From the IMG/VR virus record IMGVR_UViG_3300023174_000045, positions 124,001 through 188,000 of that record: DNA of 64,000 nucleotides; one strand, 5' to 3'. Position 1 is the stretch's first letter. Every line of letters starts with the position of its first letter. The notes beneath the pieces are model-generated. The model was not told where the DNA came from and did no database searches. It worked only from the letters and a program-made list of their open reading frames with translations. Positions 1,527-38,988 of this stretch are shown piece after piece. Position numbers and translations under genes: made by a program.

Positions 1527-4187
1527 ATGAGTTATATTGACGCACTATTTGATCGTGAACACGATCGCATTCATGTTGTAGAACGCCGCGACGGCAAACG
1601 GCAGTATCGAGAGTATCCTGCCAATTATGTGTTCTACTACGACGACCCCCGAGGCAAGTTCCAAAGTATCTACGGCACGCCAGTGTCAAGGTTCAGTACC
1701 CGCAACAACAAAGAATTCCGCAAGGAAGTCCGAGCACAAAGCGGGCGACAGATCTACGAATCGGACATAAATCCCATATTCCGTTGCTTTGAAGAAAACT
1801 ACCGAGACCAAGACGCCCCCACATTACACACAGCATTTTTTGACATTGAAGTTGCTTTTGATGCTGTGCGTGGATTCTCGCCTGTGGAGGATCCTTTCAA
1901 TCCCATCACTGCTATATCGGTATATCTGGATTGGCTGGAGCAACTTGTGACACTTGTTGTGGCACCACGCCACATGAGTGCAGAGACTGCTCGTGAGATC
2001 TGTGCGGAATTTGAGAACACTGTGCTGTGCGAATCTGAAACAGACATGGTGAAGATGTTCCTGGACCTAATCGAAGATGCAGACATCTTGAGTGGTTGGA
2101 ATTCAGAAGGCTATGACATACCCTACACAATAAACCGTGTGACACGAGTACTCAGCAAAGACGACACCCGACGTTTTTGTTTGTGGGGGCAGTTTCCCAA
2201 GAAACGTATGTTTGAACGTTTTGGTGCTGAACAAGAAACTTATGACTTGGTGGGTCGTGTGCATATGGACTATATGCAACTGTATCGCAAATACACTTAT
2301 GAAGAGCGTCATAGTTATAGCCTGGATGCCATTGCTGAATACGAACTGGGTGAACGCAAAACACAATACGAAGGCACACTAGATCAATTGTACAACAACG
2401 ACTTTCCAAAGTTTATTGAATACAACCGACAAGATACATTGTTGTTGGACAAACTGGACAAGAAATTACGTTTCTTGGAACTGGCCAGCGAACTGGCACA
2501 TGCCAACACTGTGCTGTTGGCCACCACAATGGGTGCTGTGGCAGTGACTGAGCAGGCCATTATCAACGAAGCACATGAACGTGGCATGGTTGTGCCCAAT
2601 CGCAAGCAACGACTCACTGACGAGGACACACAGGCAGCAGGTGCCTATGTGGCATATCCCAAAAAAGGATTACATGAATGGATTGGGTCTGTGGACATCA
2701 ATTCATTGTATCCCAGTGCAATTCGTGCGTTGAACATGGGGCCAGAAACCATTATAGGTCAACTGCGTCCCATAATGACAGACCGGTATATCAAAGACAA
2801 AATGGCCAAGGGTGACTCATTTGCGGCAGCATGGGAAGGTGTGTTTGCCAGTCTAGAATACACTGCTGTGATGGAACAACAGCGTGGCACAGAGATCACC
2901 ATTGACTGGCAGTCAGGTGAGGAGACTGTACACTCGGGTGCTGAGATTTGGTACATGTTGTTTGACTCAAACCAACCTTGGATACTCAGTGCCAATGGTA
3001 CCATATTCACCTACGAAAAGAAAGGCGTTATTCCTGGCTTGCTGGAACGCTGGTATGCCGAACGCAAAGAAATGCAGGCCAAGAAAAAGGAGGCCAAGGA
3101 TGCCAAAGAGATTGCTTTCTGGGACAAACGTCAACTGGTTAAAAAGATTAATCTCAACAGTTTGTATGGCGCTATTCTTAATCCTGGCTGCCGCTTTTTT
3201 GACAAGCGAATTGGCCAATCAACTACCTTGACCGGTCGAAGTATTGCCAAACACATGGATGCGCACTTGAATGAATGTATCACAGGTGAATATGATCATA
3301 TGGGTAAAGCAGTAATCTACGGTGACACAGACTCCTGCTACTTCTCAGCATGGCCTGTGCTGAAACAAGAAGTTGCCGAAGGCCGCATGGAATGGTCAAA
3401 GGAAATCTGTATTCAGTTATACGATTCAATTGCTGACCAGGTGAACGACTCGTTCCCGGCATTTATGGAACGTGCTTTTCACTGTCCCAGAGACATGGGC
3501 GAGTTGATCAAAGCCGGACGTGAAACTGTAGCAGATCGCGGACTGTTCATCACCAAGAAACGCTATGCTGTGAACGCCATTGACATTGAAAACAAACGAC
3601 TGGACATCAACGGTGCTATTGGCAAGACCAAGGCTACTGGCCTGGATCTAAAGCGCAGTGATACCCCCAAAGTTATTCAAGACTTCTTGTTGGAAATTCT
3701 AAATAAAGTGCTGGCTGGTGCTGAACGTGAAGAAATCATTGAACGTGTGCGTGAGTTCAAGTATGAATTCAAAGAGCGGCCGGGCTGGGAAAAAGGCTCG
3801 CCCAAGCGTGTGAACAACTTGACCAAGTACGGCAAGGAAGAAGAACGCCTGGGCAAAGCCAACATGCCCGGACATGTACGTGCGGCCCTGAACTGGAACA
3901 ACTTGCGCAGAATGAATTCAGACAATTACAGTATGCAGGTGGTTGATGGTATGAAGACCATTGTGTGCAAACTGCGAAGCAATGCCTTGGGCTGGACGTC
4001 AATTGGCTATCCCACAGACGAGATGCACTTGCCGCAATGGTTCAAGGACTTGCCTTTTGATGACACAGAAATGGAAGCCACTGTGGTGGATCAAAAGATT
4101 GACAACTTATTAGGTGTGTTGGACTGGGACCTGGCAGCAGCCACCAACACTGAAAACACATTTACTTCGTTATTTTCTTTCGAATGA
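1527..4187 (+). CDS. DNA polymerase family B (T4 gp43-like)
   Basis: ExoI FDIE, motif A DINSLYPS, motif B KKINLNSLYG, motif C YGDTDS. Confidence 0.97.
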   Translation: MSYIDALFDREHDRIHVVERRDGKRQYREYPANYVFYYDDPRGKFQSIYGTPVSRFSTRNNKEFRKEVRAQSGRQIYESDINPIFRCFEENYRDQDAPTLHTAFFDIEVAFDAVRGFSPVEDPFNPITAISVYLDWLEQLVTLVVAPRHMSAETAREICAEFENTVLCESETDMVKMFLDLIEDADILSGWNSEGYDIPYTINRVTRVLSKDDTRRFCLWGQFPKKRMFERFGAEQETYDLVGRVHMDYMQLYRKYTYEERHSYSLDAIAEYELGERKTQYEGTLDQLYNNDFPKFIEYNRQDTLLLDKLDKKLRFLELASELAHANTVLLATTMGAVAVTEQAIINEAHERGMVVPNRKQRLTDEDTQAAGAYVAYPKKGLHEWIGSVDINSLYPSAIRALNMGPETIIGQLRPIMTDRYIKDKMAKGDSFAAAWEGVFASLEYTAVMEQQRGTEITIDWQSGEETVHSGAEIWYMLFDSNQPWILSANGTIFTYEKKGVIPGLLERWYAERKEMQAKKKEAKDAKEIAFWDKRQLVKKINLNSLYGAILNPGCRFFDKRIGQSTTLTGRSIAKHMDAHLNECITGEYDHMGKAVIYGDTDSCYFSAWPVLKQEVAEGRMEWSKEICIQLYDSIADQVNDSFPAFMERAFHCPRDMGELIKAGRETVADRGLFITKKRYAVNAIDIENKRLDINGAIGKTKATGLDLKRSDTPKVIQDFLLEILNKVLAGAEREEIIERVREFKYEFKERPGWEKGSPKRVNNLTKYGKEEERLGKANMPGHVRAALNWNNLRRMNSDNYSMQVVDGMKTIVCKLRSNALGWTSIGYPTDEMHLPQWFKDLPFDDTEMEATVVDQKIDNLLGVLDWDLAAATNTENTFTSLFSFE

Positions 4188-5160: not shown

Positions 5161-5883
5161 ATGAGAGATTATCTTAAAGACTTGGTAGAACACACACATG
5201 ATCTTGGCTGCATTGACTTGATCAAAATCACTGGCGATGACAAAAGCACAGCCATTGTGGGCGTGGCAGAAGATTTGAGTGTGGTGTTAGAAGGTGAATT
5301 CAAAAATCCACATCCAGATTTTATAGGCACATTTGGCATGCCCAACTTGAACAAGTTGAAAATTTTGTTGAACTTGCAAGAGTACAAGGAAAATGCCAAA
5401 CTCAAACTGACCAAGAAGGCCACAGGTGCTCCTGATGGCATTGAGTTTGAAAATGCTGGAGGAGACTTCCGCAACACATATCGTTTCATGGCAGCAGAAA
5501 TTGTCAACGACAAACTCAAAACACCCAAGTTCAAAGGGGTGACATGGCACATTGAATTTGAGCCCACTGTGGCTGCCATCCAAAAATTGCGTATGCAAGC
5601 ACAGGCCAATGCCGAAGAGCCCAACTTCCAGGCCCGGACCGAAAATGGCGACTTGAAGTTCTTCTTTGGTGACCATTCAACACACGCTGGTAACTTTGTG
5701 TTCCACTCAGGTGTCAACGGTCAATTGAAACGTGCTTGGAGTTGGCCTGCTCAACAGTTCATGTCCATCATGGCCCTGACTGGGGACAAAACTATTCGCA
5801 TCAGTGATGACGGTGCTGCCAAGATCACTGTGGATTCAGGCGTGGCTGTTTACAACTACATCTTACCAGCACAAAGCAAATAA
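5161..5883 (+). CDS. Sliding clamp (gp45-like)
   Basis: 240 aa near polB, FG.PNL.KL pattern of T4-like clamps. Confidence 0.7.
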   Translation: MRDYLKDLVEHTHDLGCIDLIKITGDDKSTAIVGVAEDLSVVLEGEFKNPHPDFIGTFGMPNLNKLKILLNLQEYKENAKLKLTKKATGAPDGIEFENAGGDFRNTYRFMAAEIVNDKLKTPKFKGVTWHIEFEPTVAAIQKLRMQAQANAEEPNFQARTENGDLKFFFGDHSTHAGNFVFHSGVNGQLKRAWSWPAQQFMSIMALTGDKTIRISDDGAAKITVDSGVAVYNYILPAQSK

Positions 5884-6089
5884 TGGAAACCAAAGCTAGA
5901 ACTGTGACAAGAATGATCACGTATAGAATAACCGCATGGTTGTTTACTATATTTTGGACTTGGTTGTTTACTGGTGACATTGCTTCGGCCACAGGATTTG
6001 CCACAGCTCTACACATCATGCTCAGTGTAGATTATTACATACACGAGCGTATCTGGTTAAAAATCAAGTGGGGCCGAATTGCAGGATAA
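5883..6089 (+). CDS. DUF2061-like small membrane protein
   Basis: ET..RT...YR and YYIHERIW..IKWG pattern. Confidence 0.65.
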   Translation: METKARTVTRMITYRITAWLFTIFWTWLFTGDIASATGFATALHIMLSVDYYIHERIWLKIKWGRIAG

Positions 6090-7605
6090 CTTAACCGCCA
6101 AACAAAATGATTACGCTGTGTTCTTACCAGCCATATCAGGTTTCTATGCCACATTTGTAGGCAAGCAACGCAACGAACCGTATGTGGATCCTGCACGTTT
6201 TCCTGCAGGGCTCACAGACATGGAACAAATGAATTGGCTCAACAGCCAAAAGGCGTTGTTCCCATACCGGTGGAGTCTGTATTCAGGCGGCCATGCCAAC
6301 TTGGACTTGAACAAACAAGACTGGTCAGAGGACATGGTTCGCAATCGCGAGCCAGGCACGTTCATGCTGGGCGACTCAGGTGGATTCCAGATTGCCAAGG
6401 GCCTGTGGGAAGGCGACTGGAAAGCCAACTCAGGCTGTGCCAAGGCTGAAAAGAAACGTAGTTCTATTCTTAAATGGTTGGACACGATCAGCGACTACGG
6501 TATGATCCTTGATATCCCTACCTGGGTCATTCATGACAAGAAAGCCAGCGATGCTTGCGGTATCAAGACACTGGAAGAAGCAGTGGATGCTACCAAGTAC
6601 AACAATGAGTACTTCATGGCTCATCGTAAAGGAAAGAAAAACGGTGGTGCTAAGTTCTTGAACGTGTTACAAGGTGACAACCACACATCAGCAGAAACAT
6701 GGTATCAAACCATGAAACAATACTGTGACCCTGTGCTGTACCCAGACACACACTTTGATGGGTGGGCCATGGGTGGTCAGAACATGTGTGATGTACACTT
6801 GGTGCTCAAACGTCTAATCGCACTCAAATACGATGGATTGTTGCAACCTGGCATACATGATTGGATGCACTTTTTGGGCACATCAAAGTTGGAATGGGCT
6901 GTGCTACTCACCGTGATTCAAAGAGCAGTTAGAAAATACGCTAATCCCGAATTTACTATCTCCTTTGATTGTGCCAGTCCATTCCTCGCCACAGCCAATG
7001 GTCAAGTGTACTATGAAAATGTGTTTGAACATGATTCAAAATGGTCGTATCGCATGGCACCGTCAGCAGACGACAAGAAGTATGCCACAGACACACGCAA
7101 GTGGCGAGATGGTGTACTTGCAGATGGCATCTATCCACGCTGGGAAGATAGTCCAATCAGCGACATGCTGAAGATGAAAGACATCTGTATCTATGCACCC
7201 GGAGATGTTAATAAAAATGGTAAAGAAGGCAAGACGTCGTGGGATAGTTTCTCATATGCTTTGCTGATGGGTCACAATGTTTGGATGCACTTGACTGCTG
7301 TGCAAGAAGCCAACAGACGCTTTGATGCCGGAGAACATCCTGCCATGATGCGTCGACAAGGCGGCGACTATGCCAAGTTCGAAGACATTGTGGAAGCCAT
7401 ATTTGCCGCGTCCACACGTGAGGAGAGTGAAGCCATTATTGAACACTACAGTGGTTATTGGATGGAGATTGTGGGCACACGTGGCTTCAAAGGCAAAAAA
7501 GCCATGAACGCACGTACACAATTCAATGCATTGTTTGAATATGAGCAGACTGAGCAAGAAGATTTTGATTCAACCAAACTTGATCGACTGGAGGCCACAG
7601 TATGA
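6079..7605 (+). CDS. TGT-family transglycosylase, DpdA-like (TTG start)
   Basis: DSGGFQ, LDIP, LQG, AMGG, HFLG, SFDCASP motifs; Zn-binding CxCxxC absent. Confidence 0.85.
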   Translation: MQDNLTAKQNDYAVFLPAISGFYATFVGKQRNEPYVDPARFPAGLTDMEQMNWLNSQKALFPYRWSLYSGGHANLDLNKQDWSEDMVRNREPGTFMLGDSGGFQIAKGLWEGDWKANSGCAKAEKKRSSILKWLDTISDYGMILDIPTWVIHDKKASDACGIKTLEEAVDATKYNNEYFMAHRKGKKNGGAKFLNVLQGDNHTSAETWYQTMKQYCDPVLYPDTHFDGWAMGGQNMCDVHLVLKRLIALKYDGLLQPGIHDWMHFLGTSKLEWAVLLTVIQRAVRKYANPEFTISFDCASPFLATANGQVYYENVFEHDSKWSYRMAPSADDKKYATDTRKWRDGVLADGIYPRWEDSPISDMLKMKDICIYAPGDVNKNGKEGKTSWDSFSYALLMGHNVWMHLTAVQEANRRFDAGEHPAMMRRQGGDYAKFEDIVEAIFAASTREESEAIIEHYSGYWMEIVGTRGFKGKKAMNARTQFNALFEYEQTEQEDFDSTKLDRLEATV

Positions 7606-8102
7606 ACAGAGCAGGACATGATGATGTCAACTTCTTTACAGGAACCGAAGTAGAACGCACACCAGCATTTGGTCGACGCACATTGTTTGTGGTAGGTGTA
7701 CAATCAGTGGACGCTATTGCTGCCAAGTTAGAAAATGTAGACCAACACATCTTTTTTGGTGCCAACCACAGTTTCAATCCTCAAACTCCTGCAGACTGGC
7801 GGACATGGGAAGAAATGATCACACACTTTTTGGACCTTGGATATCTTTGCACTTTGGACATTCCCATCGCCGCAGTGGAAGAATTTAATGATGGTTCATT
7901 GTGTGACTACCGCAACTTTATTCCACAGATTCGAGTAAGTGTGCCGTATACAAAACTGTGGAATTATAATACAATGTTAAAAATAGATGACAAGGACTTT
8001 GACGCTACCAATCCCGGCGTCTGGTGCCACAGTCTACACAGCCTGATGAGCCGTGAGACATTTACGTCGTGGGATGATTACAAAGGTGATAGAGAATTAT
8101 GA
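7602..8102 (+). CDS. Hypothetical protein coupled to DpdA-like gene
   Basis: ATGA overlap, 166 aa. Confidence 0.8.
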   Translation: MNRAGHDDVNFFTGTEVERTPAFGRRTLFVVGVQSVDAIAAKLENVDQHIFFGANHSFNPQTPADWRTWEEMITHFLDLGYLCTLDIPIAAVEEFNDGSLCDYRNFIPQIRVSVPYTKLWNYNTMLKIDDKDFDATNPGVWCHSLHSLMSRETFTSWDDYKGDREL

Positions 8103-8398
8103 AATGGTTTGATAATTGGTTTGCTAACAAAGTTCAAGAGTCTTGGAATCGAACCAGGGCGAACCCATCAACATCAAAAAATGAAATCATGGTCAGTGAA
8201 GATCGAAACAGCATCGGCGCCAGCCGACACAGAATAAACTTCACTGTGTATCGTGCCAATGGTGGCATGATGGTAGAATACAACAGATATGATGAACGCA
8301 AAGATCATCACTCTTGTGAATTGCACATTGTACATCCTGATCAAGACCTTGGTGACGCCTTGGGCAAAATTGTAACATTTGAAAGTTTGAAATCATGA
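8099..8398 (+). CDS. Hypothetical protein
   Basis: ATGA overlaps both sides. Confidence 0.75.
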   Translation: MKWFDNWFANKVQESWNRTRANPSTSKNEIMVSEDRNSIGASRHRINFTVYRANGGMMVEYNRYDERKDHHSCELHIVHPDQDLGDALGKIVTFESLKS

Positions 8399-8829
8399 AC
8401 CAAGAACAAAGAGACCAAGCAGAACGTGTGATGGAACACGCACAGCGACAAATCTGGGTCACATGGCAACGGGAAGGTATCCATAAATATCCTGCTGCCT
8501 TGACAGATCCTGCCCTTGCTGATGTACAATTCCTTGGTTATCCTCATCGTCACATGTTTCATTTCCGGGTGTGGATTGATGTGTTCCACAACGACCGAGA
8601 TCTTGAGTTCATCCAATTCAAACGCTGGTGTGAATCGCTGTATAGCAGTGACAATTCTGTTTTAAGCCTTGATCATAAAAGTTGCGAGATGATCGCAGAC
8701 GACCTATATATACAGATAGCATCACGCTATCCTGGTCGTGTGGTACATATCGAAGTCGCAGAAGACGGCGAAAATGGCGCACTGATCAAATACGAACTAA
8801 CCCGACCCAACCTCAACATTGTCATCTAA
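8395..8829 (+). CDS. QueD-paralogue T-fold protein, DpdL-like
   Basis: LGYPHRHMF = LxxxHRHxF; SCEMIA and EDGENGA T-fold motifs. Confidence 0.7.
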   Translation: MNQEQRDQAERVMEHAQRQIWVTWQREGIHKYPAALTDPALADVQFLGYPHRHMFHFRVWIDVFHNDRDLEFIQFKRWCESLYSSDNSVLSLDHKSCEMIADDLYIQIASRYPGRVVHIEVAEDGENGALIKYELTRPNLNIVI

Positions 8830-8839: not shown

Positions 8840-9064
8840 ATGGCAAGACCCACCTTCAAACCCAATCCCAAAGTCACAGAGATCCAAGAGGATCTTGAAG
8901 TGTACTTGGACTTCTGTCAGGACTATGGCTATCGTTACAACGAGGCCGATTTGTATAACTTCAAGAGTTATGCATGGCAACAATTCAACAAGTGGCATCA
9001 AGGCAAGAATGCCAAGAACATGTGGGACGAAGATACTCGTCGCTTTGCAGGATATCGCACATGA
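8840..9064 (+). CDS. Hypothetical protein
   Basis: SD AAGGAG, 74 aa. Confidence 0.75.
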   Translation: MARPTFKPNPKVTEIQEDLEVYLDFCQDYGYRYNEADLYNFKSYAWQQFNKWHQGKNAKNMWDEDTRRFAGYRT

Positions 9065-10263
9065 GAAAGTTGTACTACATGGGCCTTGAAAGTTATGAGG
9101 CCCGTTACACACTGCAACTAACTGAATGGAATCGACGTGTGTTTGAACGTCGAGGCTTGGATGTGGTATACGTACCTGGTGTCACCATTGACAACACCCA
9201 AAGCATCAGTGTTGGACAGGTGTTGGATGCGCATGGTCGCAGTTACTTTTCAATGAGCCAAATGATGAACTTGGTTCAACTCATGAAGAATGGAGAAGTC
9301 ACCAATGAAGATGTGGTCTACTTTGAAGACATGTTTCAGCCAGGTATCGAAAGTCTCCCTTACATCATGGATCAAATTGATCCTAGCCAGCGTCCCCGTG
9401 TTTATGTTCGTTGTCTTGCTCAGGCCATTGACCCTGATGATTTTGTACATGTGTGGGGCATGGCGAACTGGATGGCAACGTATGAAAAAATGGTCAACCA
9501 CTTTGTAACTGGCGTGTTAGCCACCAATGAAGAAATGGTGGCTCACATGCGTATTGCAGGTTGGACTGCTCCAATCTACAACATCTCCGGCTTGGCATTT
9601 GGCAAAGAGGAAGTGCTGGAACGCATTGGTGGTGCCAGCAACATTCGACCATTTGCAGATCGACCAAGACGAGTGGGCTTTGCGGCACGTTGGGATCAAG
9701 AGAAGCAACCAGGCTTCTTCATGGACTTGATTGAGATGTATGGTGAACTTACCACAGAGCCTTGCGAGTTTGCAATCTATTCGGGTGGCCCATTGCGTAG
9801 CAACAATCCAGAATATGTTACTAGAGCCAGGGCCATGGAAGCAGCCGGCAAACTCAAGATATACGACAACATCTCAAAGAACGAATACTATGCACATCTC
9901 AACAACACTCGTGTGTTGTTTAATTGTGCGTTACAAGATTGGGTGTCTAACACAGTTTCAGAAGCAGATACTCTGGGCTGTAATGTGTTGTATCCTGCTT
10001 ATAGATCTTTCCCCGAAACTTTTTCAAATGATCCCAACAGGCTGTATGTGCCTTGGAGCATAGATGATGCTTATCACAAAATGCAAAACCTTTTACGAGA
10101 ACCACATCACAACATGGGTCTCATATCTAACTGGACTGATGGTACTGTTGATCGCATCGTTGATATACTGCTTGGTAATGGTGAGCAGTGGAATCGTGCA
10201 GGCAATAGATATCGTGATCACGTGGCTGAAGAAAAGTATCATGTTGTAAAGGTTGAAGAATGA
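9061..10263 (+). CDS. GT-B fold glycosyltransferase (GT4-like)
   Basis: FAARWDQEKQP, QDWVSNTVSEADTLGC motif; ATGA overlap start. Confidence 0.8.
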   Translation: MRKLYYMGLESYEARYTLQLTEWNRRVFERRGLDVVYVPGVTIDNTQSISVGQVLDAHGRSYFSMSQMMNLVQLMKNGEVTNEDVVYFEDMFQPGIESLPYIMDQIDPSQRPRVYVRCLAQAIDPDDFVHVWGMANWMATYEKMVNHFVTGVLATNEEMVAHMRIAGWTAPIYNISGLAFGKEEVLERIGGASNIRPFADRPRRVGFAARWDQEKQPGFFMDLIEMYGELTTEPCEFAIYSGGPLRSNNPEYVTRARAMEAAGKLKIYDNISKNEYYAHLNNTRVLFNCALQDWVSNTVSEADTLGCNVLYPAYRSFPETFSNDPNRLYVPWSIDDAYHKMQNLLREPHHNMGLISNWTDGTVDRIVDILLGNGEQWNRAGNRYRDHVAEEKYHVVKVEE

Positions 10264-10454
10264 TTAACGAACACTTCAAAAATCAAATAGAGCAAGGTGC
10301 TACTACTATGTTTTTCTATGGCTTAGAATCAGGGTCGGGCCCGTTTAAAATTAATATCACAAATCACAAAGATACATTGGACACATTTCCAACTAACTTA
10401 GAGTTTGTTAGAATGCTGAGTGAAAGTATGCCATTATTCAAGGAAATCGAATGA
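10260..10454 (+). CDS. Hypothetical protein
   Basis: Coupled to both neighbours. Confidence 0.6.
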   Translation: MINEHFKNQIEQGATTMFFYGLESGSGPFKINITNHKDTLDTFPTNLEFVRMLSESMPLFKEIE

Positions 10455-11410
10455 GCACAGTAGTTGTCACAGGCATCTCAGGATTCATAGGTGGCCAAAC
10501 TGCACTGCTGTTGAAAGACGCAGGCGAACGTGTGATTGGCATTGATCGCCACCCACTGCCAGCACACCTCAAAGGTGTGTGTGATCGATTTGTGCAGGAA
10601 GATTTTTCCAGCAAACACGCACTCAGTGTGATTGTGCAAGAACTCCCTGACGCCATTGTACACTGTGCCGGTGCCAGCCTGGTTGGTCCCAGCATGAAGG
10701 ATCCAGCCTTGTACTACCAAAACAATGTGGTAGACACATTTGAATTGTTGGAAATTGTTCGCCGGGCGTTACCAAAAACCAAGATTATCTTCAGTAGCAG
10801 TGCAGCCACATACGGTGAGCCTGTGATGTTGCCTGTACACGAAGTTGATCCTGCTGAACCTGTGTCACCATATGGTCAAAGCAAACTCATGGTGGACATG
10901 ATGTTGGAATCATATCATCGTGCCTATGATCTCAACTGTGTGAGTTTTCGTTATTTCAATGCCTGTGGTGCTGATCCAAAGAAGCGGCATGGTCAAGCAC
11001 CGGGTGCCACACACATCATTGCCAGAGTGTTGGAAGCCCTTAGAGATGACAGCGAGTTCACGTTAAATGGTGTAGACTTTCCCACCCCGGATGGTACTTG
11101 TGTGAGAGACTACGTGCATGTGGAAGACATAGCACGAGCACACAGCCTGGCTATCTATCATGACATTGCCTCAGGTGTGTATAATCTAGGCTCCAACAAC
11201 GGAACCAGCAATCGAGAAATCATTGCCGCAGCCGAGCGTGTGACTGGACGGAAATTGAAAGTGATTATGGGTACAGCCAGGCCGGGTGATCCTGCTGTGC
11301 TCACTGCCAGTGCTGCCAAGTTTGGCCGGGTTGGGGAAGGTTGGCGACAGTTTGAACTGGATGACATGATTCAACACGCCTGGAACTGGTATGTTCGAAA
11401 AGATACTTGA
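10451..11410 (+). CDS. galE: UDP-glucose 4-epimerase-like SDR
   Basis: TGISGFIG, SSSAATYG, YGQSK, RYFNACG, RDYVHV. Confidence 0.88.
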   Translation: MSTVVVTGISGFIGGQTALLLKDAGERVIGIDRHPLPAHLKGVCDRFVQEDFSSKHALSVIVQELPDAIVHCAGASLVGPSMKDPALYYQNNVVDTFELLEIVRRALPKTKIIFSSSAATYGEPVMLPVHEVDPAEPVSPYGQSKLMVDMMLESYHRAYDLNCVSFRYFNACGADPKKRHGQAPGATHIIARVLEALRDDSEFTLNGVDFPTPDGTCVRDYVHVEDIARAHSLAIYHDIASGVYNLGSNNGTSNREIIAAAERVTGRKLKVIMGTARPGDPAVLTASAAKFGRVGEGWRQFELDDMIQHAWNWYVRKDT

Positions 11411-11981
11411 GTTTGAAACAGCCGTGGTCCAGTTCACTGGTGCGCCATATGCTGTGATGACTGACTGTTGTACCCATGCCATTGAATTGTGCATGCGGTA
11501 TGACCGGGTGGAGTTTTGTGCATTCACCCCATTTACCTATTTGAGCATACCCATGCTCATGCACAAGTTAGGTATCAAATATGCGTACGAAGTAGGTGAT
11601 CCTGCTCAATGGGTAGGCGAATATCGGTTTAGAAAAACACGAATCTGGGACAGTGCTCGACGCTTAGAACGCAACATGTATCGACCAGGACAGATACAAT
11701 GCGTGAGTTTTGGATATGACAAACCCTTGCCTATTGGGCGTGGCGGTGCAATATTGTTGGATGATGCTGAAGCTTATCACAACTTGTTGGCCATGCGTTA
11801 CGATGGACGAGATTTAACTGCATCGCCCTGGGTCTCACAACAAACTTTTAAGGTCGGATATCATTATCGACCTACAATAGAAGAAGCTGAACGTGGATTG
11901 GAGTTGTTAAATCAATACACCAGCCAACCACCAAGACAGATAGTTTATCCAGACTGCAGACAAATTATTATTATAGATTGA
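11391..11981 (+). CDS. DegT/DnrJ-type sugar aminotransferase (short)
   Basis: CCTHAIEL, WDSA, SFGYDKPL..GRGG with PLP Lys. Confidence 0.75.
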   Translation: MFEKILEFETAVVQFTGAPYAVMTDCCTHAIELCMRYDRVEFCAFTPFTYLSIPMLMHKLGIKYAYEVGDPAQWVGEYRFRKTRIWDSARRLERNMYRPGQIQCVSFGYDKPLPIGRGGAILLDDAEAYHNLLAMRYDGRDLTASPWVSQQTFKVGYHYRPTIEEAERGLELLNQYTSQPPRQIVYPDCRQIIIID

Positions 11982-12024: not shown

Positions 12025-12765
12025 ATGGGCTACGACAAAGTATATATTAGCAACGACGAAGAAACTGTGAATACCAGCAAAAATTTATCACAAATACTTA
12101 GAGAACAAATGAAAGCCCGAGGTCAACGCTTCTGGGCTGGCGACAACATCAGCGATTACATGAGCGAAGCAGTGAAAGAAAAACTCATTGACGAAGCCAC
12201 AGTGGCATTTGAAGGTGTGTTAGATGCGTTACTAATTGACAGAGAAAACGATCCAAACTCAAAAGGCACAGCACGGCGCCTGGCTAAAATGTACTACAAC
12301 GAAATAATGGCAGGAAGATATGAACCAGCACCAGACGCAACAGCATTTCCAAATGATTCAGCAGACCGTTATGAAGGCATGCTGGTTGTACGCAGTGAAC
12401 TTCGCAGTATGTGCAGTCATCATCATCAACCAGTTAGTGGGGTCGCCTATATTGGAATCATCGCTGCCAACAAGCTCATTGGTCTATCTAAGTATACTCG
12501 CATTGCTCAATGGTGTGCTAGGCGTGGTACTTTACAGGAAGAACTGTGCATAGACATTGCCAATGAAATCATGGCAGCAACTGCGTCAAAGGATGTTGGT
12601 GTGTACATTCAGGCAGTGCATGGATGCTGTGAAAACCGTGGCATTATGGCACATAGTTCGTTGACACAGACCACTGTGTTGCGAGGTGCGTTTAAAACGG
12701 ATGACAGTGTTAAAAAAGAGTTCATGGACAATATTAAATTGCAACAAGAGTTTGCACCTCGCTGA
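12025..12765 (+). CDS. folE: GTP cyclohydrolase I
   Basis: SMCSHH, GLSK..R, LQE, HGCC..RG. Confidence 0.95.
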   Translation: MGYDKVYISNDEETVNTSKNLSQILREQMKARGQRFWAGDNISDYMSEAVKEKLIDEATVAFEGVLDALLIDRENDPNSKGTARRLAKMYYNEIMAGRYEPAPDATAFPNDSADRYEGMLVVRSELRSMCSHHHQPVSGVAYIGIIAANKLIGLSKYTRIAQWCARRGTLQEELCIDIANEIMAATASKDVGVYIQAVHGCCENRGIMAHSSLTQTTVLRGAFKTDDSVKKEFMDNIKLQQEFAPR

Positions 12766-16257: not shown

Positions 16258-17297
16258 GTGTATGGACTGATTGGGATCCATTGGAAGAAGTCATAGTAGG
16301 CAACTGCTATTCTCCTGGTGCTCTCAATTGGTTTGTTGAACCCGCATTACAACACAAGTTCAACAACATACTAACGGAAACCAAACAAGATCTCAATAAT
16401 CTAGCAGTGTTATTGCAAGGACTGGGTGTACAGGTACACCGTCCGCAAGTACATGCCAGTACACACAGTGTAGATTTAGCAACATTCTCAGTACCATGCC
16501 CTACCAGTCCAATGGTGCCAAGAGATCAATATCTAGTGTATGGCGATACAGTGTATCAAACCTATACCAGCATGAATGACAGGTATTTTGACAGTCTCGG
16601 CTATTATAATATCTTTCAAGGATTATTTGATCAAGGGCATAACTGGATCAGTCAGCCGCCACCTAATCTTCGCAACTTACCTGCTGATAAAAATTGGAGC
16701 AATCAAGGATCGCTAATTTACAATCACTTGTATCACAATCAACTGTTGTGGCACACTGCTACCATGTTCAAGTGTGGCGATAGACTGATTACCAATACCA
16801 CAGGCCCAGGCACTCAATCTGGGCTAGAATGGATGCGCAGAAACTTGCCTGCAGACACCGTGGTAGAAAATACTAGTACCGCCATGCACAACTGGGGACA
16901 CATTGATCATGGATTTTTCATGATTGACGATGACACAGTGATCTGTGTTGATCGTGAGTTTGTTCCTGAATGTTTGCGTGACAAAACTGTGCATGAGGTA
17001 TATCAGTATCTTCCCAAGGAAAGTATTGATCCTGCTACACCGATAGACCGACTGCTTGATCCCAGCAAAGGATACGAACAGGTTGTGGCGTTTGATACCA
17101 ATGTATTGGTAGTTGATTCGCACAATATTGTGTTTGACAACAACATGCCCGAACTGTTTGAGTTCTTGGCAACACTTAGTGTAAAATGTTATGTAGCACC
17201 GCTGAGACACAGAAAGTTTTGGGCTTCAGGAATACATTGTTCAACCTTGGATATTCGACGCCGTGGTCAAAAAAGAAAGATTATCAATGAAGTATGA
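16254..17297 (+). CDS. Amidinotransferase (pentein family)
   Basis: WDPLEEVIVG, PRD, HIDH, GIHCSTLD with catalytic Cys. Confidence 0.85.
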   Translation: MSVWTDWDPLEEVIVGNCYSPGALNWFVEPALQHKFNNILTETKQDLNNLAVLLQGLGVQVHRPQVHASTHSVDLATFSVPCPTSPMVPRDQYLVYGDTVYQTYTSMNDRYFDSLGYYNIFQGLFDQGHNWISQPPPNLRNLPADKNWSNQGSLIYNHLYHNQLLWHTATMFKCGDRLITNTTGPGTQSGLEWMRRNLPADTVVENTSTAMHNWGHIDHGFFMIDDDTVICVDREFVPECLRDKTVHEVYQYLPKESIDPATPIDRLLDPSKGYEQVVAFDTNVLVVDSHNIVFDNNMPELFEFLATLSVKCYVAPLRHRKFWASGIHCSTLDIRRRGQKRKIINEV

Positions 17298-17688
17298 AAC
17301 ACTAGAAGAAGCGCAGGCAGCAGGTGTTGCGCCTTGGGACCTCAAGATTGGAGAATATAGCGACTACCATGTCTCTGTGTTCCAAGATCGATATCCTGTG
17401 GCTCGTGGACATTTGTTGTTTGTGCCGCAATACAATACAGATGAAGTGATAACAGACTGCTTTGAATCAGCCATGCGGCATGGTCGTAGACTGGTACGAG
17501 ATGGAGAATGTGATGCATTCAACATTGGCATCAACATGGGCGAGGCCGCTGGCCAAACTGTGATGTATCCACATGTGCATTTGATTCCCCGACGCCATGG
17601 CGACTGTGCTGATCCTGTGGGCGGTATACGTGGAGTCGTATTTGGACAAGCCAACTACAAAGCCGCAGGCTATCAACAGCCAGCATAA
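17287..17688 (+). CDS. HIT-family nucleotide hydrolase
   Basis: AGQTVMYPHVHLIPR. Confidence 0.85.
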   Translation: MKYETLEEAQAAGVAPWDLKIGEYSDYHVSVFQDRYPVARGHLLFVPQYNTDEVITDCFESAMRHGRRLVRDGECDAFNIGINMGEAAGQTVMYPHVHLIPRRHGDCADPVGGIRGVVFGQANYKAAGYQQPA

Positions 17689-17770: not shown

Positions 17771-18268
17771 ATGTCACCAGTAACATACAAATACACATCA
17801 ACCAAAGAATATCACGATGCATTTCCATGCGCATATCGGCAGTGGCGAGCAGACAGCCATTGTAATTTGATACACGGCTATTCGTTTAGTATGAAGTTTT
17901 ATTTTGGCACTGACAACTTAGACGCACGTAACTGGGCCGCTGACTATGGCGGCTTAAAAGAACTCAAAGGTGTGTTGGAAAGTCAATTTGATCATACATT
18001 GCTAGTGGCCGAAGACGATCCTGAACTAGAATTGTATTTAGAAATGCAAAACAAAAACATTGCCAAGTTGACTATATTACCTAAACTAGGATGCGAAGGA
18101 CTTGCTGATCAGCTGTACAAATATGTCAACGGCGTTTACATTCCTGACTTTTGGGGCCCAGGTGAAGCTGAACGTCTTTGGTGCTATCGTGTAGAGGTGC
18201 GTGAAACACAAAGTAACATGGCTTTCCGAGAAGGTCATAGAGAATGGAACGAAGATTTATTTGTGTGA
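17771..18268 (+). CDS. queD: 6-carboxytetrahydropterin synthase
   Basis: HCNLIHGY, FDH, GCEGLA, VEVRET. Confidence 0.9.
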   Translation: MSPVTYKYTSTKEYHDAFPCAYRQWRADSHCNLIHGYSFSMKFYFGTDNLDARNWAADYGGLKELKGVLESQFDHTLLVAEDDPELELYLEMQNKNIAKLTILPKLGCEGLADQLYKYVNGVYIPDFWGPGEAERLWCYRVEVRETQSNMAFREGHREWNEDLFV

Positions 18269-18320: not shown

Positions 18321-19163
18321 ATGAGCACACATGATTTTGACATTTCCGTATTACTTCCCACGCGGGCAAGAACTGACATGCTGTTTCGCAGTATTCGAAC
18401 ACTGTTTGATCTAGCAGACAACAAAGATCGCATATATCTTTTGGTTGGTTTTGACCGCGACGATGCCAAGGGCATTGACTATTTCAGTCAAGAGATACAA
18501 CCTTGGTTGGCCGAAAATGACATTGAATACAGTGCTATGATTTTTGAGCCCATGGGGTATGAAAACTTAAATGTGTATTACAATCTGTTGGCCAAGCAAC
18601 AATCCGCTGATTGGTATTTTGTCTGGAATGATGATGCAACCATGGTCACCCAGGGATGGGACACAGTGATTCGCAACCACAACGCTGAGTTTCAAATACT
18701 CAAAGTGCATACGCATCATGAACACCCTTACAGTATTTTCCCCATTGTGCCACACAAATGGTATGAACTATTGGGCACATTGAGCCGACATCAGATGATT
18801 GACGCTGAAATAAGTCAAATGGCTTATATGTTGGACATGGTAAAAATTGTCGACATTGATGTGATTCATCAACCTTCGCCTGTGCCCAAAGTGCGATTTG
18901 AAAATACCATCAATGATGTTAGAGATTTTCATCATGAGACCTGGAGGAATCAACGCATGAAAGATTGTGCAACGCTGGCAACATACATGCACTCAGTTGA
19001 TCCCAACAGTACCACATTCTTCAGAAATGTGCTGGAAGGCCGGCAAGATCCTTGGGAAAAATTAGTGGCCAACGACATCAACAAACAACAAATACAATTT
19101 CCCATTGCAGTAGAACAACAAACATATTTTCCTGCTGAACTAAAGATTGGTCTGAATTCATGA
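18321..19163 (+). CDS. GT2-like glycosyltransferase
   Basis: SVLLPTR, VWNDD motif. Confidence 0.75.
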   Translation: MSTHDFDISVLLPTRARTDMLFRSIRTLFDLADNKDRIYLLVGFDRDDAKGIDYFSQEIQPWLAENDIEYSAMIFEPMGYENLNVYYNLLAKQQSADWYFVWNDDATMVTQGWDTVIRNHNAEFQILKVHTHHEHPYSIFPIVPHKWYELLGTLSRHQMIDAEISQMAYMLDMVKIVDIDVIHQPSPVPKVRFENTINDVRDFHHETWRNQRMKDCATLATYMHSVDPNSTTFFRNVLEGRQDPWEKLVANDINKQQIQFPIAVEQQTYFPAELKIGLNS

Positions 19164-20380: not shown

Positions 20381-20787
20381 AACACTACAACATCTACAAC
20401 AACAATGAAAAAGGTCTGGGAAGTTTCCAAGACAATCGAGGAACCATCACAGATATTTTTCATCATATCAACGTAAACTCTGCTTGTATCATTACCAACA
20501 CTCCAGGTGCAGTTCGTGCCAATCACTATCATGAATTGACCACACAGTATACCTATGTGTTGTCTGGATCATTGGATTACTATTCCAAGCCGGTGGGCAG
20601 TACAGAACCAGCTGATGTGATCACAGCAGGCCCCGGCGATATGATAATCAGCAAACCCAATGAGATACATGCATGGCGTACCGGTGCCGAAGGATGCACA
20701 TTGATTGCATTTGCACAAGGTCCACGTGGCGGCGAAGACTACGAAAATGACACTGTGCGTGTAGATTCAATCATTCCCGATGCCTAA
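20377..20787 (+). CDS. Cupin, sugar isomerase/epimerase-like
   Basis: DNRG, RANHYH, EIHA. Confidence 0.75.
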   Translation: MKHYNIYNNNEKGLGSFQDNRGTITDIFHHINVNSACIITNTPGAVRANHYHELTTQYTYVLSGSLDYYSKPVGSTEPADVITAGPGDMIISKPNEIHAWRTGAEGCTLIAFAQGPRGGEDYENDTVRVDSIIPDA

Positions 20788-23122: not shown

Positions 23123-23995
23123 ATGTTTGGAACTAACGAAATTATTGGCAAGAAGTATTTTAAGGACGCACCCGCAGACAGTTTGTTTGTAACCAGTATG
23201 TTCTTTACACTGCAAGGTGAAGGTCCGTATGCAGGTCAGCCTGCGCTGTTTATACGCCTGGCCAAATGTAACTTGGATTGCAGTTTCTGTGACACATACT
23301 TTGATGATGGTGACTGGTTGACATTCGATCAACTTGAAAACAAAATGCATGCCGCGGTCAATGACTTTTGGGGCAAGCAAGGCAAAACTGTGCCTGTCTG
23401 GGCCAACAATGGTATTGGCCATCCAGGTGTGGTGTTGGTAATGACCGGTGGCGAACCGTTGTTACAAGAAAATATTTCAGCGTTTATGAGTCGCCAATTA
23501 CCGCGATTCAAGGCTGTACAAGTTGAAAGCAATGGCATTCCAGAAACTGCTGTGCCCGAGGGTGTCACGCTGGTATGCAGTCCCAAGTGCATGGAAAAGA
23601 ACGGTGTTGCCACTAAATATCTTGCACCAAGCAAAACCATATTGGATCGTGCAGACTGCTTGAAGTTTGTTATGACAGCAGATGCAGATAGTCCATACAA
23701 CAGTATTCCTGAGTGGGCACATGAATGGAAGCGTGTGAATCCCCAAAAAGAAATCTATTGCAGTCCAATGAATGTGTACAACGATTTCCCACAAAGGATC
23801 AAACTGTTGCGAGCAGAAAAGGGCACAATCACCATGGCCGAACGTAGCACAGTGGATGAGGTCATCAGTTTCTGGGAGCCTGGTTTGTTGAACTTGACAG
23901 CCAATCAAGCCAATCACGAATACACCGGTCGCTACTGTGTTGAGCATGGGCTCAAATTGAACTTGCAGATGCATTTATATGCAAGCCTGGCATGA
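23123..23995 (+). CDS. queE: 7-carboxy-7-deazaguanine synthase (radical SAM)
   Basis: TLQGEGP, CNLDCSFCDT, TGGEPLL, ESNG, SPK. Confidence 0.93.
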   Translation: MFGTNEIIGKKYFKDAPADSLFVTSMFFTLQGEGPYAGQPALFIRLAKCNLDCSFCDTYFDDGDWLTFDQLENKMHAAVNDFWGKQGKTVPVWANNGIGHPGVVLVMTGGEPLLQENISAFMSRQLPRFKAVQVESNGIPETAVPEGVTLVCSPKCMEKNGVATKYLAPSKTILDRADCLKFVMTADADSPYNSIPEWAHEWKRVNPQKEIYCSPMNVYNDFPQRIKLLRAEKGTITMAERSTVDEVISFWEPGLLNLTANQANHEYTGRYCVEHGLKLNLQMHLYASLA

Positions 23996-24424: not shown

Positions 24425-24916
24425 ATGATGGATGGAAGACGAGTGGGCTTTACCGCCTCAACTTTTGATTTGTTACACGCTGGCCACATTGCCATGTTGC
24501 GTGAAGCCAAAGAAGAATGCGACTATTTGATTTGCGCATTGCAAAACGACCCCACCCTGGATCGGCCCAACAAGAATCGTCCAGTGCAAAGCATTGTAGA
24601 ACGACAACTGCAACTGATTGGGTGCAAGTATGTGGACGAAGTTTGGGTGTACAACACAGAAAAAGATCTAGAAGACTTGTTGTTGATCCTGCCCATTGAT
24701 GTGCGTATACTGGGTGTAGAATACGAAGGACGTGAATTTACCGGACGTGAAATTTGTCACAAACGAGATATTGAATTGCACTTCAACGGACGTGATCACT
24801 CTTTTAGTAGCAGTGAACTACGCCAGCGTGTGGCCAATGCTGAATCTTTAAAAAAGAAACTGGAAGAATGGGAACCAGTGGGTGCAGATGACACAGGTGG
24901 ACCCAGCCCAAGATGA
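24425..24916 (+). CDS. Cytidylyltransferase (TagD-like)
   Basis: FDLLHAGH, KYVDEV, SSSELR. Confidence 0.9.
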   Translation: MMDGRRVGFTASTFDLLHAGHIAMLREAKEECDYLICALQNDPTLDRPNKNRPVQSIVERQLQLIGCKYVDEVWVYNTEKDLEDLLLILPIDVRILGVEYEGREFTGREICHKRDIELHFNGRDHSFSSSELRQRVANAESLKKKLEEWEPVGADDTGGPSPR

Positions 24917-36503: not shown

Positions 36504-36578
36504 GGGCTGATAGCTTAATGGTAAAGCAGTCGACTCATAATCGATTGAGTCTAGGTTCAATTCCTAGTCAGCCCACCA
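36504..36578 (+). tRNA. tRNA CAT, Ile2-like (or Met)
   Basis: Cloverleaf, CGACTCATAATCG arm as in ileX, CCA. Confidence 0.85.
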
Positions 36579-36581
36579 ACA

Positions 36582-36656
36582 CTGGCGTTAGTATAATGGA
36601 TAATACAAAGAGCTTCTACCTCTTGAATGTGGGTTCGATTCCTGCACGCCGGACCA
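36582..36656 (+). tRNA. tRNA-Arg(TCT)
   Basis: Cloverleaf, CCA. Confidence 0.9.
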
Positions 36657-36670
36657 GTAAATACAACAGT

Positions 36671-36753
36671 GCGGGTGTGGTGGAATTGGTAGACACACCT
36701 GGTTTAAGCCCAGACGCTAAGGCGTGAGAGTTCAAGTCTCTCCACCCGTACCA
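36671..36753 (+). tRNA. tRNA-Leu(TAA)
   Basis: Cloverleaf with variable arm, CCA. Confidence 0.9.
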
Positions 36754-36764
36754 AAGGAACAATC

Positions 36765-37238: not shown

Positions 37239-37242
37239 CAGC

Positions 37243-37860: not shown

Positions 37861-37871
37861 ACATGTTGAAA

Positions 37872-38537: not shown

Positions 38538-38539
38538 AG

Positions 38540-38960: not shown

Positions 38961-38988
38961 TGTATACTACACTATTGAGGAGAACAAC

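What the first reader, a model, noticed from the sequence alone, without database searches (positions are those of the whole stretch)
6079..8829. 7-deazaguanine DNA modification heading to DG/CDG: DpdA-like plus DpdL-like, no QueC in window
Seen: a TGT-fold protein with all catalytic motifs but no Zn CxCxxC; a QueD paralogue with LxxxHRHxF; and folE (12025), queD (17771), queE (23123). No queC, queF or Gat-QueC is present in this window. Established: FolE-QueD-QueE make CDG, and phage DpdA proteins put 7-deazaguanines into DNA. As I recall (verify), LxxxHRHxF marks DpdL, the proposed CDG decarboxylase. Inference: the genome carries dDG or dCDG, possibly as full G replacement, in a lineage where I do not know of it being measured.
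Basis: partly seen in the sequence, partly recalled or inferred. Interest (0 to 1): 0.7.

Follow-up and report, generated by a model that had tools for sequence, protein, structure and literature searches.

The report
Phage 7-deazaguanine DNA modification module
An uncultured freshwater jumbo phage carries the gene set that other phages use to swap guanine in their DNA for a 7-deazaguanine without the usual preQ0 step, and here that set always travels with a sugar-transferring enzyme nobody has linked to it before.

Summary
Window 6079-7605 encodes a 508-aa protein with no Pfam, PHROG or NCBIfam hit. Its model matches tRNA-guanine transglycosylase (Z 18-19), and it keeps DSGGFQ, LDIP, LQG, GG and FDC but has no CxCxxC zinc site. 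Window 8395-8829 encodes a DpdL homologue with LGYPHRHMF, 58% identical to ACP17 DpdL and 35% to the phiST prototype. FolE, QueD and QueE lie at the stated positions. QueC and QueF are absent from the 225-kb contig, and QueC also from a complete 347-kb relative.

- A GT-B/GT4 glycosyltransferase (9061-10263) lies beside DpdL in nine phage lineages, including PA5oct, ACP17, Phosso, BUCT-ZZ01, BUDD and BCSR5. It is absent from phiST, the only group where dDG was measured.
- A 166-aa unknown (7602-8102) and NDP-sugar genes are also conserved in the module.
- The transglycosylase belongs to a clade I could not assign to DpdA3.

Best reading: a QueC-independent 7-deazaguanine DNA modification. The base could be dDG or a further-modified, possibly glycosylated, derivative. 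This is a known kind of system in a new, abundant lineage with an unrecognised conserved component. No chemistry was tested.

The parts
6079..7605 (+). DpdA-like transglycosylase (508 aa). It has the TGT fold and the catalytic Asp motifs D99, D145 and D297, but no zinc CxCxxC site. It belongs to clade I with PA5oct gp168, the Phosso 549-aa protein and the marine L090 512-aa protein.
7602..8102 (+). Conserved 166-aa protein of unknown fold. It is translationally coupled to the transglycosylase gene. Homologues occur in 18 of 18 lineage relatives, in marine L090 (172 aa) and in ACP17 gp122.
   Evidence: Pfam, PHROG and NCBIfam gave nothing; the atlas search was inconclusive
8099..8398 (+). Variable 99-aa ORF, present in 5 of 18 relatives. 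Probably not a core part of the module.
8395..8829 (+). DpdL homologue (144 aa). It is a T-fold QueD paralogue with L47GYPHRHMF in place of QueD's CxxxHG(H/Y). The conserved SCE and EDGEN glutamates are present.
   Evidence: motif definition in PMC10516641
8841..9064 (+). Conserved 74-aa ORF (18 of 18 relatives). Its stop overlaps the glycosyltransferase start codon (ATGA).
9061..10263 (+). GT-B/GT4-type glycosyltransferase (400 aa), adjacent to DpdL in nine phage lineages.
10451..11410 (+). NAD-dependent sugar epimerase/4,6-dehydratase family protein (319 aa), conserved in 18 of 18 relatives.
11391..11981 (+). Short DegT/DnrJ-like aminotransferase-family protein (196 aa), conserved at this length in 18 of 18 relatives.
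12025..12765 (+). FolE, GTP cyclohydrolase I.
17263..17688 (+). HIT-family protein, conserved in 17 of 18 relatives and in the module of marine L090.
17771..18268 (+). QueD (CPH4 synthase) with the C31NLIHGY motif.
23123..23995 (+). QueE (CDG synthase) with the radical-SAM motif C49NLDCSFC.
24425..24916 (+). Cytidylyltransferase-like nucleotidyltransferase. A homologue lies in the module of marine L090.

Best explanation
The window carries a QueC-independent 7-deazaguanine DNA-modification module of the DpdA/DpdL type.

Established enzymology for these families: FolE, QueD and QueE convert GTP to 7-carboxy-7-deazaguanine (CDG).

Inferred from homology:
- The QueD paralogue DpdL processes CDG. 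Cui et al. propose a metal-dependent decarboxylation to 7-deazaguanine.
- The TGT-fold enzyme exchanges guanine in phage DNA for that base through the Asp297 nucleophile, after replication.

In this lineage, and in PA5oct, ACP17, Phosso, BUCT-ZZ01, BUDD and BCSR5, the module also contains a GT4 glycosyltransferase. A 166-aa unknown protein is conserved in the window's lineage, the marine contig L090 and ACP17. These probably take part in the same pathway. The final base is therefore dDG or a derivative of it. The biological role is protection of virion DNA from restriction enzymes that read G.
For: - TGT fold and the full set of catalytic motifs.
- Structural neighbours among viral proteins are phage DpdA/TGT proteins: Motura, nt-1, R5C and phiST.
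- DpdL homology and motif, with the definition in PMC10516641.
- FolE, QueD and QueE are present. QueC, QueF and Pfam TGT are absent from the contig, and QueC is absent from a complete relative.
- The genes are translationally coupled and conserved in 18 of 18 relatives.
- Family members elsewhere sit in operons with PTPS, a QueE-sized gene and FolE, or beside DpdL and the GT.
- phiST, with the analogous gene set, has 100% dDG.
- hhalign places a gap where TGT has the LAVGE segment after the GG motif. From my own knowledge, that segment reads the 7-substituent of preQ1. The gap would fit an altered substrate pocket. This is weak evidence.
Against: - No chemistry exists for this lineage.
- DpdL activity is unproven. 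ACP17 dpdL plus dpdA gave no dDG in E. coli.
- The transglycosylase is only remotely related to the DpdA3 of the phages in which dDG was measured.
- The contig is about 65% complete, although a complete relative gives the same QueC result.
- The phage encodes its own Tyr, Asp, His and Asn GUN tRNAs, so a tRNA substrate is not excluded by gene content.
- A phosphoribosyltransferase sits in the module of PA5oct, BUCT-ZZ01, L090 and G003. This hints that some relatives work at the nucleotide level.
Confidence: 0.75

Rival explanations
1. The end product is not plain dDG but a further-modified 7-deazaguanine. The conserved GT4 enzyme would attach a sugar made by the adjacent epimerase/dehydratase and DegT-like genes, either to the free base or precursor or to the base once it is in DNA.
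For: - The GT4 lies within about 4 kb of DpdL in nine independent lineages: the window clade, marine L090, SHEN23 L092, PA5oct, ACP17, BUDD/X1, BUCT-ZZ01 (which has two GTs), Phosso and BCSR5.
- The model has a GT-B fold, and relatives carry PF00534.
- Epim319 and DegT196 are conserved next to it in 18 of 18 relatives.
- No thymidylate-synthase-like hydroxymethylase is present, so the GT is not serving an hmC or hmU pathway.
- ACP17 dpdA plus dpdL alone gave no dDG.
- GT-B enzymes that glycosylate DNA exist, for example T4 beta-glucosyltransferase (my own knowledge).
Against: - dDG offers no obvious hydroxyl or amine acceptor.
- No glycosylated 7-deazaguanine is reported in the papers I could search.
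- The phiST group, RHph_I1_18, Bakedbeans and Ahp1 have DpdL without this GT in the regions fetched.
- Sugar genes are common in jumbo phages for other purposes.
- The C-methyltransferase and other sugar genes are variable within the lineage.
Confidence: 0.25
2. The 7-deazaguanine enters DNA before replication, as a nucleotide. The route would be base plus PRPP to a nucleoside monophosphate, then the dNTP, then the polymerase. The TGT-like enzyme would have an accessory or salvage role.
For: - A PRTase (PF00156) is embedded in the module in PA5oct (gp163), BUCT-ZZ01, marine L090 and relative G003.
- HIT and nucleotidyltransferase genes are conserved in the module.
- From my own knowledge, deazapurine nucleoside antibiotic pathways use such PRTases on CDG or preQ0.
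Against: - No PRTase is found in the window's contig, in the complete relative G001 or in G002.
- The transglycosylase keeps every catalytic residue.
- Cui et al. argue that insertion is post-replicative wherever a DpdA is present.
Confidence: 0.08
3. The TGT-like enzyme modifies tRNA, either host tRNA or the phage's own GUN tRNAs, rather than DNA.
For: - The fold is that of tRNA-guanine transglycosylase.
- The window encodes tRNA-Tyr, Asp, His and Asn with GUN anticodons.
Against: - No QueC, QueF or canonical TGT was found. From my own knowledge, no tRNA is known to carry CDG or DG.
- The zinc CxCxxC site of the tRNA enzymes is missing in all 66 family members.
- The gene lies between PolB and replication genes.
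- Relatives with this module show DNA-level phenotypes: phiST dDG and PA5oct restriction resistance.
Confidence: 0.05
4. FolE, the PTPS-like DpdL and the GT4 make a glycosylated pterin (a small molecule) rather than a DNA base. Only QueD, QueE and the TGT-like enzyme would concern deazaguanine.
For: - A cyanobacterial tetrahydrobiopterin alpha-glucosyltransferase is among the GT-B structural matches, at rank 44.
- DpdL is a PTPS/QueD-fold protein, and SDR genes lie nearby.
Against: - DpdL lacks the catalytic cysteine of PTPS and QueD.
- The rank-44 match is one GT4 among hundreds.
- DpdL and the GT4 are tightly linked to the transglycosylase and QueE across lineages.
Confidence: 0.04

Closest known systems
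Cellulophaga phage phiST system (FolE, QueD, QueE, DpdL, DpdA3), with dDG replacing all dG (Cui et al., NAR 2023, PMC10516641)
   Same: - The precursor genes are the same, and there is no QueC.
- It has a DpdL with LxxxHRHxF, 35% identical to the window protein.
- It has a TGT-fold transglycosylase without a Pfam-level TGT signature.
   Different: - phiST DpdA3 is 259 aa and only marginally similar: hhalign 66.8% over 82 columns and Foldseek E 1.9e-3.
- phiST has an ATPase and a MazG between the genes, and no GT4 or 166-aa protein.
- phiST is a 78-kb siphovirus-like phage of a Bacteroidota host.
Pseudomonas jumbo phage PA5oct, gp162-gp168 (Arenbergviridae)
   Same: - gp168 is 35% identical to the window transglycosylase.
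- gp167 is the GT4 homologue, gp166 is DpdL (56%) and gp162 is QueE.
- A PolB and a structural gene lie upstream, as in the window.
- Its DNA resists G-containing restriction sites.
   Different: - The gene order is transglycosylase, GT, DpdL.
- It has a PRTase (gp163) and a short Rossmann protein (gp164).
- No homologue of the 166-aa protein was found in the fetched region.
- The base has not been identified in the papers I could read.
Acidovorax phage ACP17, gp122-gp126
   Same: It has a homologue of the 166-aa protein (gp122), a TGT-like gene (gp123), the GT4 (gp124, named glycosyl transferase family 1 by UniRef), DpdL (gp125, 58%) and QueE.
   Different: - gp123 belongs to a second TGT-like clade, linked to the window clade only at profile level (hhalign 96.8%).
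- ACP17 is a 156-kb T4-like phage.
- dpdA plus dpdL gave no dDG in E. coli.
Bacterial and eukaryotic tRNA-guanine transglycosylase (TGT, PF01702)
   Same: - The TIM-barrel fold matches (Z 18-19).
- DSGGFQ, the substrate Asp, QG, GG and the nucleophile Asp are all shared.
   Different: - Identity is about 14-15%, with no Pfam hit.
- There is no zinc CxCxxC...H site.
- The segment after GG is altered.
- The protein has an extra C-terminal helical region of about 100 aa.
Campylobacter phage CP220-type system (DpdA3 with dADG)
   Same: It is a QueC-less or QueC*-type pathway that stops near CDG, with complete G replacement by a DpdA3.
   Different: The product is the amide (ADG), attributed to a QueC homologue. 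The window lineage has no QueC-like gene. I did not compare sequences directly.

Membership tests
DpdL (proposed CDG decarboxylase, QueD paralogue) | Sequence homology to the prototype, phiST CGPG_00067 (gp040) | tested here: met
   tblastn 35% identity, E 9e-10. phmmer E about 1e-15. 58% identical to ACP17 DpdL.
DpdL (proposed CDG decarboxylase, QueD paralogue) | Signature LxxxHRHxF replacing QueD's CxxxHGH, that is, loss of the catalytic Cys | tested here: met
   L47GYPHRHMF. Alignment A4 shows Leu at the position where the co-encoded QueD has Cys31.
DpdL (proposed CDG decarboxylase, QueD paralogue) | [quoted passage not shown] | tested here: met
DpdL (proposed CDG decarboxylase, QueD paralogue) | Decarboxylates CDG to 7-deazaguanine | not testable with these tools
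   This is unproven even for the prototype.
DpdA / TGT superfamily (DNA-guanine transglycosylase) | TGT TIM-barrel fold | tested here: met
   Foldseek probability 1.00; VIA-align Z 18-19 over about 305 residues.
DpdA / TGT superfamily (DNA-guanine transglycosylase) | Catalytic and substrate Asp residues (Z. mobilis D102, D156, D280) and the QG and GG motifs | tested here: met
   D99, D145 and D297 are aligned by hhalign and invariant or nearly so in the family.
DpdA / TGT superfamily (DNA-guanine transglycosylase) | Exchanges guanine in DNA for a 7-deazaguanine | not testable with these tools
   Inferred from context and from relatives.
Canonical tRNA TGT (Pfam PF01702) | Match to the Pfam TGT model above the gathering score | tested here: not met
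   No hit for the protein or in the six-frame genome search. Only 2 of 66 family members reach E 0.043.
Canonical tRNA TGT (Pfam PF01702) | Zinc site CxCxxC...H | tested here: not met
   No CxCxxC or CxxC in the protein, and none in any of the 66 family members.
DpdA3 subfamily (phiST, CP220 and immuto type) | Significant similarity to phiST CGPG_00065 | tested here: inconclusive
   hhalign 66.8% over 82 columns. No tblastn link. Foldseek E 1.9e-3, ranked below the Motura and nt-1 DpdA-type proteins. The paper's subfamily table is in a supplement that is not held.
GT-B / GT4 glycosyltransferase (window 9061-10263) | Two-Rossmann GT-B fold with the conserved R/K...EK and E motifs | tested here: met
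   Model pLDDT 79. Top matches are glycogen synthase, BshA, MshA and PimA at probability 1.00. R210, E214, K215 and E301 are invariant. Relatives carry PF00534. The window protein itself has no Pfam hit.
GT-B / GT4 glycosyltransferase (window 9061-10263) | Donor and acceptor identity | not testable with these tools
   Only genomic linkage to DpdL and the TGT-like gene is available.

The most novel reading that the evidence does not exclude
The conserved DpdA-like, DpdL, GT4 (plus the 166-aa protein and NDP-sugar genes) module makes a previously undescribed, sugar-bearing 7-deazaguanine in DNA. That base would be present in an abundant group of freshwater and marine phages and in cultured phages such as PA5oct, ACP17, Phosso and BUCT-ZZ01. 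The GT4 would be the 'missing enzyme' that explains why dpdA plus dpdL alone failed in E. coli.
Probability: 0.2. Interest if true: 0.85.

Novelty: new variant of a known kind. Interest (0 to 1): 0.55.

Why it matters
7-Deazaguanine replacement of G is one of the most complete anti-restriction DNA modifications known. Its QueC-independent branch (dDG) rests on two unvalidated enzymes, DpdL and DpdA3.

This window shows that branch in a very abundant uncultured lineage:
- The transglycosylase alone has more than 7,000 near relatives in metagenomes and 976 clusters at 50% identity.
- The lineage consists of freshwater jumbo phages of about 350 kb.

Most DpdL systems outside the phiST group also carry a conserved glycosyltransferase that the literature I could search does not mention. 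That gives concrete candidates for the missing components of the pathway. Several cultured phages are available for direct mass-spectrometric and genetic tests. The result also bears on sequencing bias, restriction mapping and defence sensing (END nucleases) of such phages.

Tried and rejected
- Pfam, PHROGs and NCBIfam gave nothing for the 508-aa protein, the 166-aa protein or the glycosyltransferase itself.
- blastn of the region against cultured phages found nothing.
- phmmer and profile searches of PDB sequences gave only noise for the transglycosylase.
- A protein-atlas look-up of the 166-aa protein gave PHP-domain clusters at 0.82, below the level that means anything.
- The Phosso 'glycosylase' upstream of DpdL is not its homologue.
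- The supplementary tables of Cui et al., which list DpdA subfamily members, are not held. I therefore could not check whether PA5oct or ACP17 proteins were already called DpdA3.
- The idea that the GT serves an hmC or hmU glycosylation pathway was rejected. No thymidylate-synthase-like gene is present in the contig or in a complete relative.
- Weak QueC-like hits in two relatives were followed up. They are NAD synthases and are absent from the window's genome.
- No nanopore run holding this sequence was listed. The listed holders are kept as assembled contigs of lake and river metagenomes and cannot show base modification.
- The top PDB sequence match of the GT family (8xsg) is an Actinobacillus glucoside glucosyltransferase, not a DNA enzyme.
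- The search for related loci and the search for homologous proteins were saturated by near-identical relatives of the abundant lineage. Diversity had to come from ACP17-centred and representative searches.
- No complex prediction was attempted.
Full report
**Setting.** The window is bases 124,001-188,000 of a 225,080-bp viral contig. The contig has 44.8% G+C and is estimated to be about 65% complete. Close relatives reach 347-365 kb, and one 346,856-bp relative has direct terminal repeats. The sequence is held by lake, river and estuary metagenomes. The family-B DNA polymerase just upstream (1527-4187) is 51% identical to that of Sinorhizobium jumbo phage Phosso and 48% to Agrobacterium phage Atu_ph07. 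Next come Vibrio phage 2.275.O (46%) and the roughly 350-kb jumbo phages such as GAP32, CBB and 121Q (about 43%). All genes in the region are on the + strand, and many are translationally coupled.

**The observation.** ORF 6079-7605 (508 aa) has no Pfam, PHROG or NCBIfam match. It belongs to a very large family: more than 7,000 close relatives in one search, and 976 clusters at 50% identity with E up to 1e-3 in another.

An alignment of 66 diverse full-length members has these invariant residues: S69, D99, S100, G102, P147, H264 and D297. Near-invariant residues include G101, Q104, D145, N195, G199, G228 and G267. The AlphaFold2 model is confident, with pLDDT 89 and pTM 0.90. Every top PDB match is a tRNA-guanine transglycosylase: Foldseek probability 1.00 and VIA-align Z 18-19 over about 305 residues.

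hhalign against E. coli TGT aligns five motifs:
- DSGGFQ with DSGGFQ
- LDIP with the D143 motif
- LQG with IQG
- GG with GG
- FDC with the nucleophile motif

The zinc CxCxxC site is absent from this protein and from all 66 family members.

ORF 8395-8829 (144 aa) has LGYPHRHMF and matches phrog_17812. It is 64% identical to a Phosso protein, 58% to ACP17 gp125 and 35% to phiST gp040. Cui et al. (PMC10516641) define DpdL by exactly this change, from QueD's CxxxHGH to LxxxHRHxF. In alignment A4, Leu47 sits where the co-encoded QueD has Cys31.

FolE, QueD and QueE are confirmed, and QueE has CNLDCSFC. QueC, QueF and Pfam TGT are absent from the whole contig. QueC is also absent from the complete relative. 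Weak QueC-like hits in two other relatives are NAD synthases with no counterpart in this genome.

The ORF after DpdL really starts at 9061, where its ATG overlaps the stop of a conserved 74-aa ORF. It encodes a 400-aa protein.
- It is homologous to PA5oct gp167 (E 1e-14) and, through it, to ACP17 gp124. Those two share 37% identity.
- It is 63% identical to a protein of the freshwater cyanophage BUCT-ZZ01.
- ACP17 gp124 is named glycosyl transferase family 1 in UniRef, and several relatives carry PF00534.
- The model (pLDDT 79) is a GT-B fold. Its best matches are GT4-type retaining transferases: glycogen synthase, BshA, MshA and PimA.

Local HMM searches of fetched loci find this GT within about 4 kb of DpdL in nine lineages:
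1. the window clade
2. a marine contig (L090/L091)
3. another metagenomic phage (L092/L093)
4. PA5oct
5. ACP17
6. BUDD (its relative X1 carries both genes by tblastn)
7. BUCT-ZZ01, which has a second GT
8. Phosso
9. BCSR5

The regions fetched from phiST, RHph_I1_18, Bakedbeans and Ahp1 do not contain it. phiST and its siblings are the only DpdL phages with a measured base.

The 166-aa protein at 7602-8102 has homologues in the marine contig and in ACP17, where gp122 lies directly upstream of the TGT-like gene. Within the window's own clade, 18 loci have full flanks. In all 18, PolB, the 240-aa protein, the transglycosylase, the 166-aa protein, DpdL, the 74-aa ORF, the GT4, a 319-aa epimerase/dehydratase, a 196-aa DegT-like protein and FolE are present. 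HIT and QueD are present in 17 of 18. The FG-GAP protein, the C-methyltransferase and several small ORFs are variable. More nucleotide-sugar genes lie between queD and queE.

**The transglycosylase clade.** Two TGT-like clades accompany DpdL and the GT4.
- Clade I: the window protein, marine L090 (61%), PA5oct gp168 (35%) and the Phosso 549-aa protein.
- Clade II: ACP17 gp123, L092, BUCT-ZZ01 and the BUDD protein annotated 'queuine tRNA-ribosyltransferase'. These are 31-37% identical to one another.

The two clades are linked at profile level: hhalign gives 96.8% and E 2e-10. phiST DpdA3 (259 aa) is only marginally similar: hhalign 66.8%, no tblastn link, and Foldseek E 1.9e-3, behind the Motura, nt-1 and Dinoroseobacter-phage DpdA/TGT proteins. 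I therefore place the protein in the DpdA/TGT superfamily and leave the subfamily open. The paper's subfamily table was not available. A clade-I member elsewhere lies in an operon of a 385-aa gene, the TGT-like gene, PTPS, a 290-aa gene and FolE. This independently ties the clade to deazaguanine synthesis.

**Mechanism.**
- Shown by sequence and fold: the gene set for GTP to CDG, a DpdL-family protein, a catalytically complete TGT-fold enzyme, a GT-B enzyme, and the absence of the preQ0 and preQ1 branch.
- Established for the families: FolE, QueD and QueE make CDG. TGT-fold enzymes exchange guanine through an Asp nucleophile. Phage DpdA proteins put 7-deazaguanines into DNA.
- Inferred: DpdL converts CDG (decarboxylation is the published proposal), the 508-aa enzyme inserts the product into phage DNA, and the result protects the DNA from restriction.

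Support from relatives: phiST has 100% dDG. PA5oct resists five G-containing restriction enzymes and is targeted by nucleases that sense modified G. Iyer et al. listed a deazaguanine synthesis and incorporation system in PA5oct.

**What the GT4 does is not known.** Its linkage is too consistent for chance, and no hmC or hmU pathway exists for it to serve. ACP17 dpdA plus dpdL alone failed in E. coli. The GT4 and the 166-aa protein are therefore reasonable candidates for missing pathway components, or for a further decoration of the base. I found no report of a glycosylated 7-deazaguanine in DNA.

**Rivals.**
- A tRNA substrate cannot be excluded from gene content, because the window encodes 34 tRNAs including all four GUN species. 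It is disfavoured by the missing zinc site, the absent preQ1 branch, and the DNA phenotypes of relatives.
- A nucleotide-level, pre-replicative route is suggested by PRTases in the module of PA5oct, BUCT-ZZ01, L090 and one relative. The window's contig and the complete relative lack one.
- A pterin-glycoside reading rests on one low-ranked structural match. It conflicts with the loss of the catalytic Cys in DpdL.

**Novelty and verdict.** The kind of system is published (DpdA, DpdL, FolE, QueD and QueE without QueC, giving dDG). PA5oct and ACP17 carry the same module. The window is thus a new, environmentally abundant member. What appears new is a transglycosylase clade not assignable to DpdA3, together with the conserved GT4 and 166-aa components. 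Together these define a variant distinct from the phiST type and leave the chemical end product open. No chemistry could be tested here. The decisive experiments can be done on cultured relatives.

Noticed in passing
window 36504-47726: An array of 34 tRNA genes covers most amino acids. It includes Tyr(GTA), Asp(GTC), His(GTG) and Asn(GTT). At 40544-40622 there is a tRNA with a CTA anticodon, the amber-suppressor type, which ARAGORN calls 'Pyl'. TAG is the rarest stop codon in the contig (28 of 300 ORFs).
   Followed up: partly
window 38510-38980: ARAGORN calls a permuted (two-piece type) tmRNA gene with tag peptide ANDEQFALAA inside the tRNA region. From my own knowledge, permuted tmRNAs are typical of alphaproteobacteria and cyanobacteria, so this may be a clue to the host.
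   Followed up: no
window 10451-11981 and 19160-23034, 24425-24916: A nucleotide-sugar gene set is interleaved with folE, queD and queE. It comprises two epimerase/dehydratases, a short DegT-like protein (196 aa, conserved at that length), a sugar C-methyltransferase, a cupin, an SDR, a UDP-glucose dehydrogenase-like protein lacking the C-terminal domain, and a cytidylyltransferase-like protein. Only the first two are universal in the lineage.
   Followed up: partly
window 12863-15304: An 813-aa FG-GAP repeat protein sits between folE and queD. It is present in only 1 of 18 close relatives, so it looks like a recent insertion.
   Followed up: partly
L001:12955-13389 (PA5oct gp163); L005:7441-7902 (BUCT-ZZ01); L090:10524-11081; L098 (G003:C1:297437-297943): A phosphoribosyltransferase-domain protein is embedded in the deazaguanine module of several relatives. 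It is missing from the window's contig and from the complete relative G001. This may indicate a nucleotide-level branch of the pathway in some phages.
   Followed up: partly
L100:7245-8396 (Vibrio phage Bakedbeans gp176): Here DpdL is the C-terminal domain of a 383-aa protein. The N-terminal part, about 260 aa, matched nothing in my small comparison set.
   Followed up: partly
L006:7894-9467 (BUDD) and L099:9108-11123 (BCSR5): These two phages share a PAPS-reductase-like PP-loop protein and two hypothetical proteins immediately upstream of the GT4. A PP-loop enzyme could activate the CDG carboxylate, as QueC does. This was not examined further.
   Followed up: no
L005:9358-10701 (BUCT-ZZ01): The cyanophage has a second glycosyltransferase (447 aa, weak PF13692/PF00534 match) directly upstream of its TGT-like gene. 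Its module therefore carries two GTs.
   Followed up: no
window 5161-5883: A 240-aa protein (phrog_12062) just upstream of the transglycosylase is conserved in the lineage and in L090. Its homologue in PA5oct (gp170) was detected in virions by mass spectrometry, and a 'virion structural protein' sits at the matching position upstream of the Phosso transglycosylase. A structural gene thus consistently neighbours the transglycosylase.
   Followed up: partly
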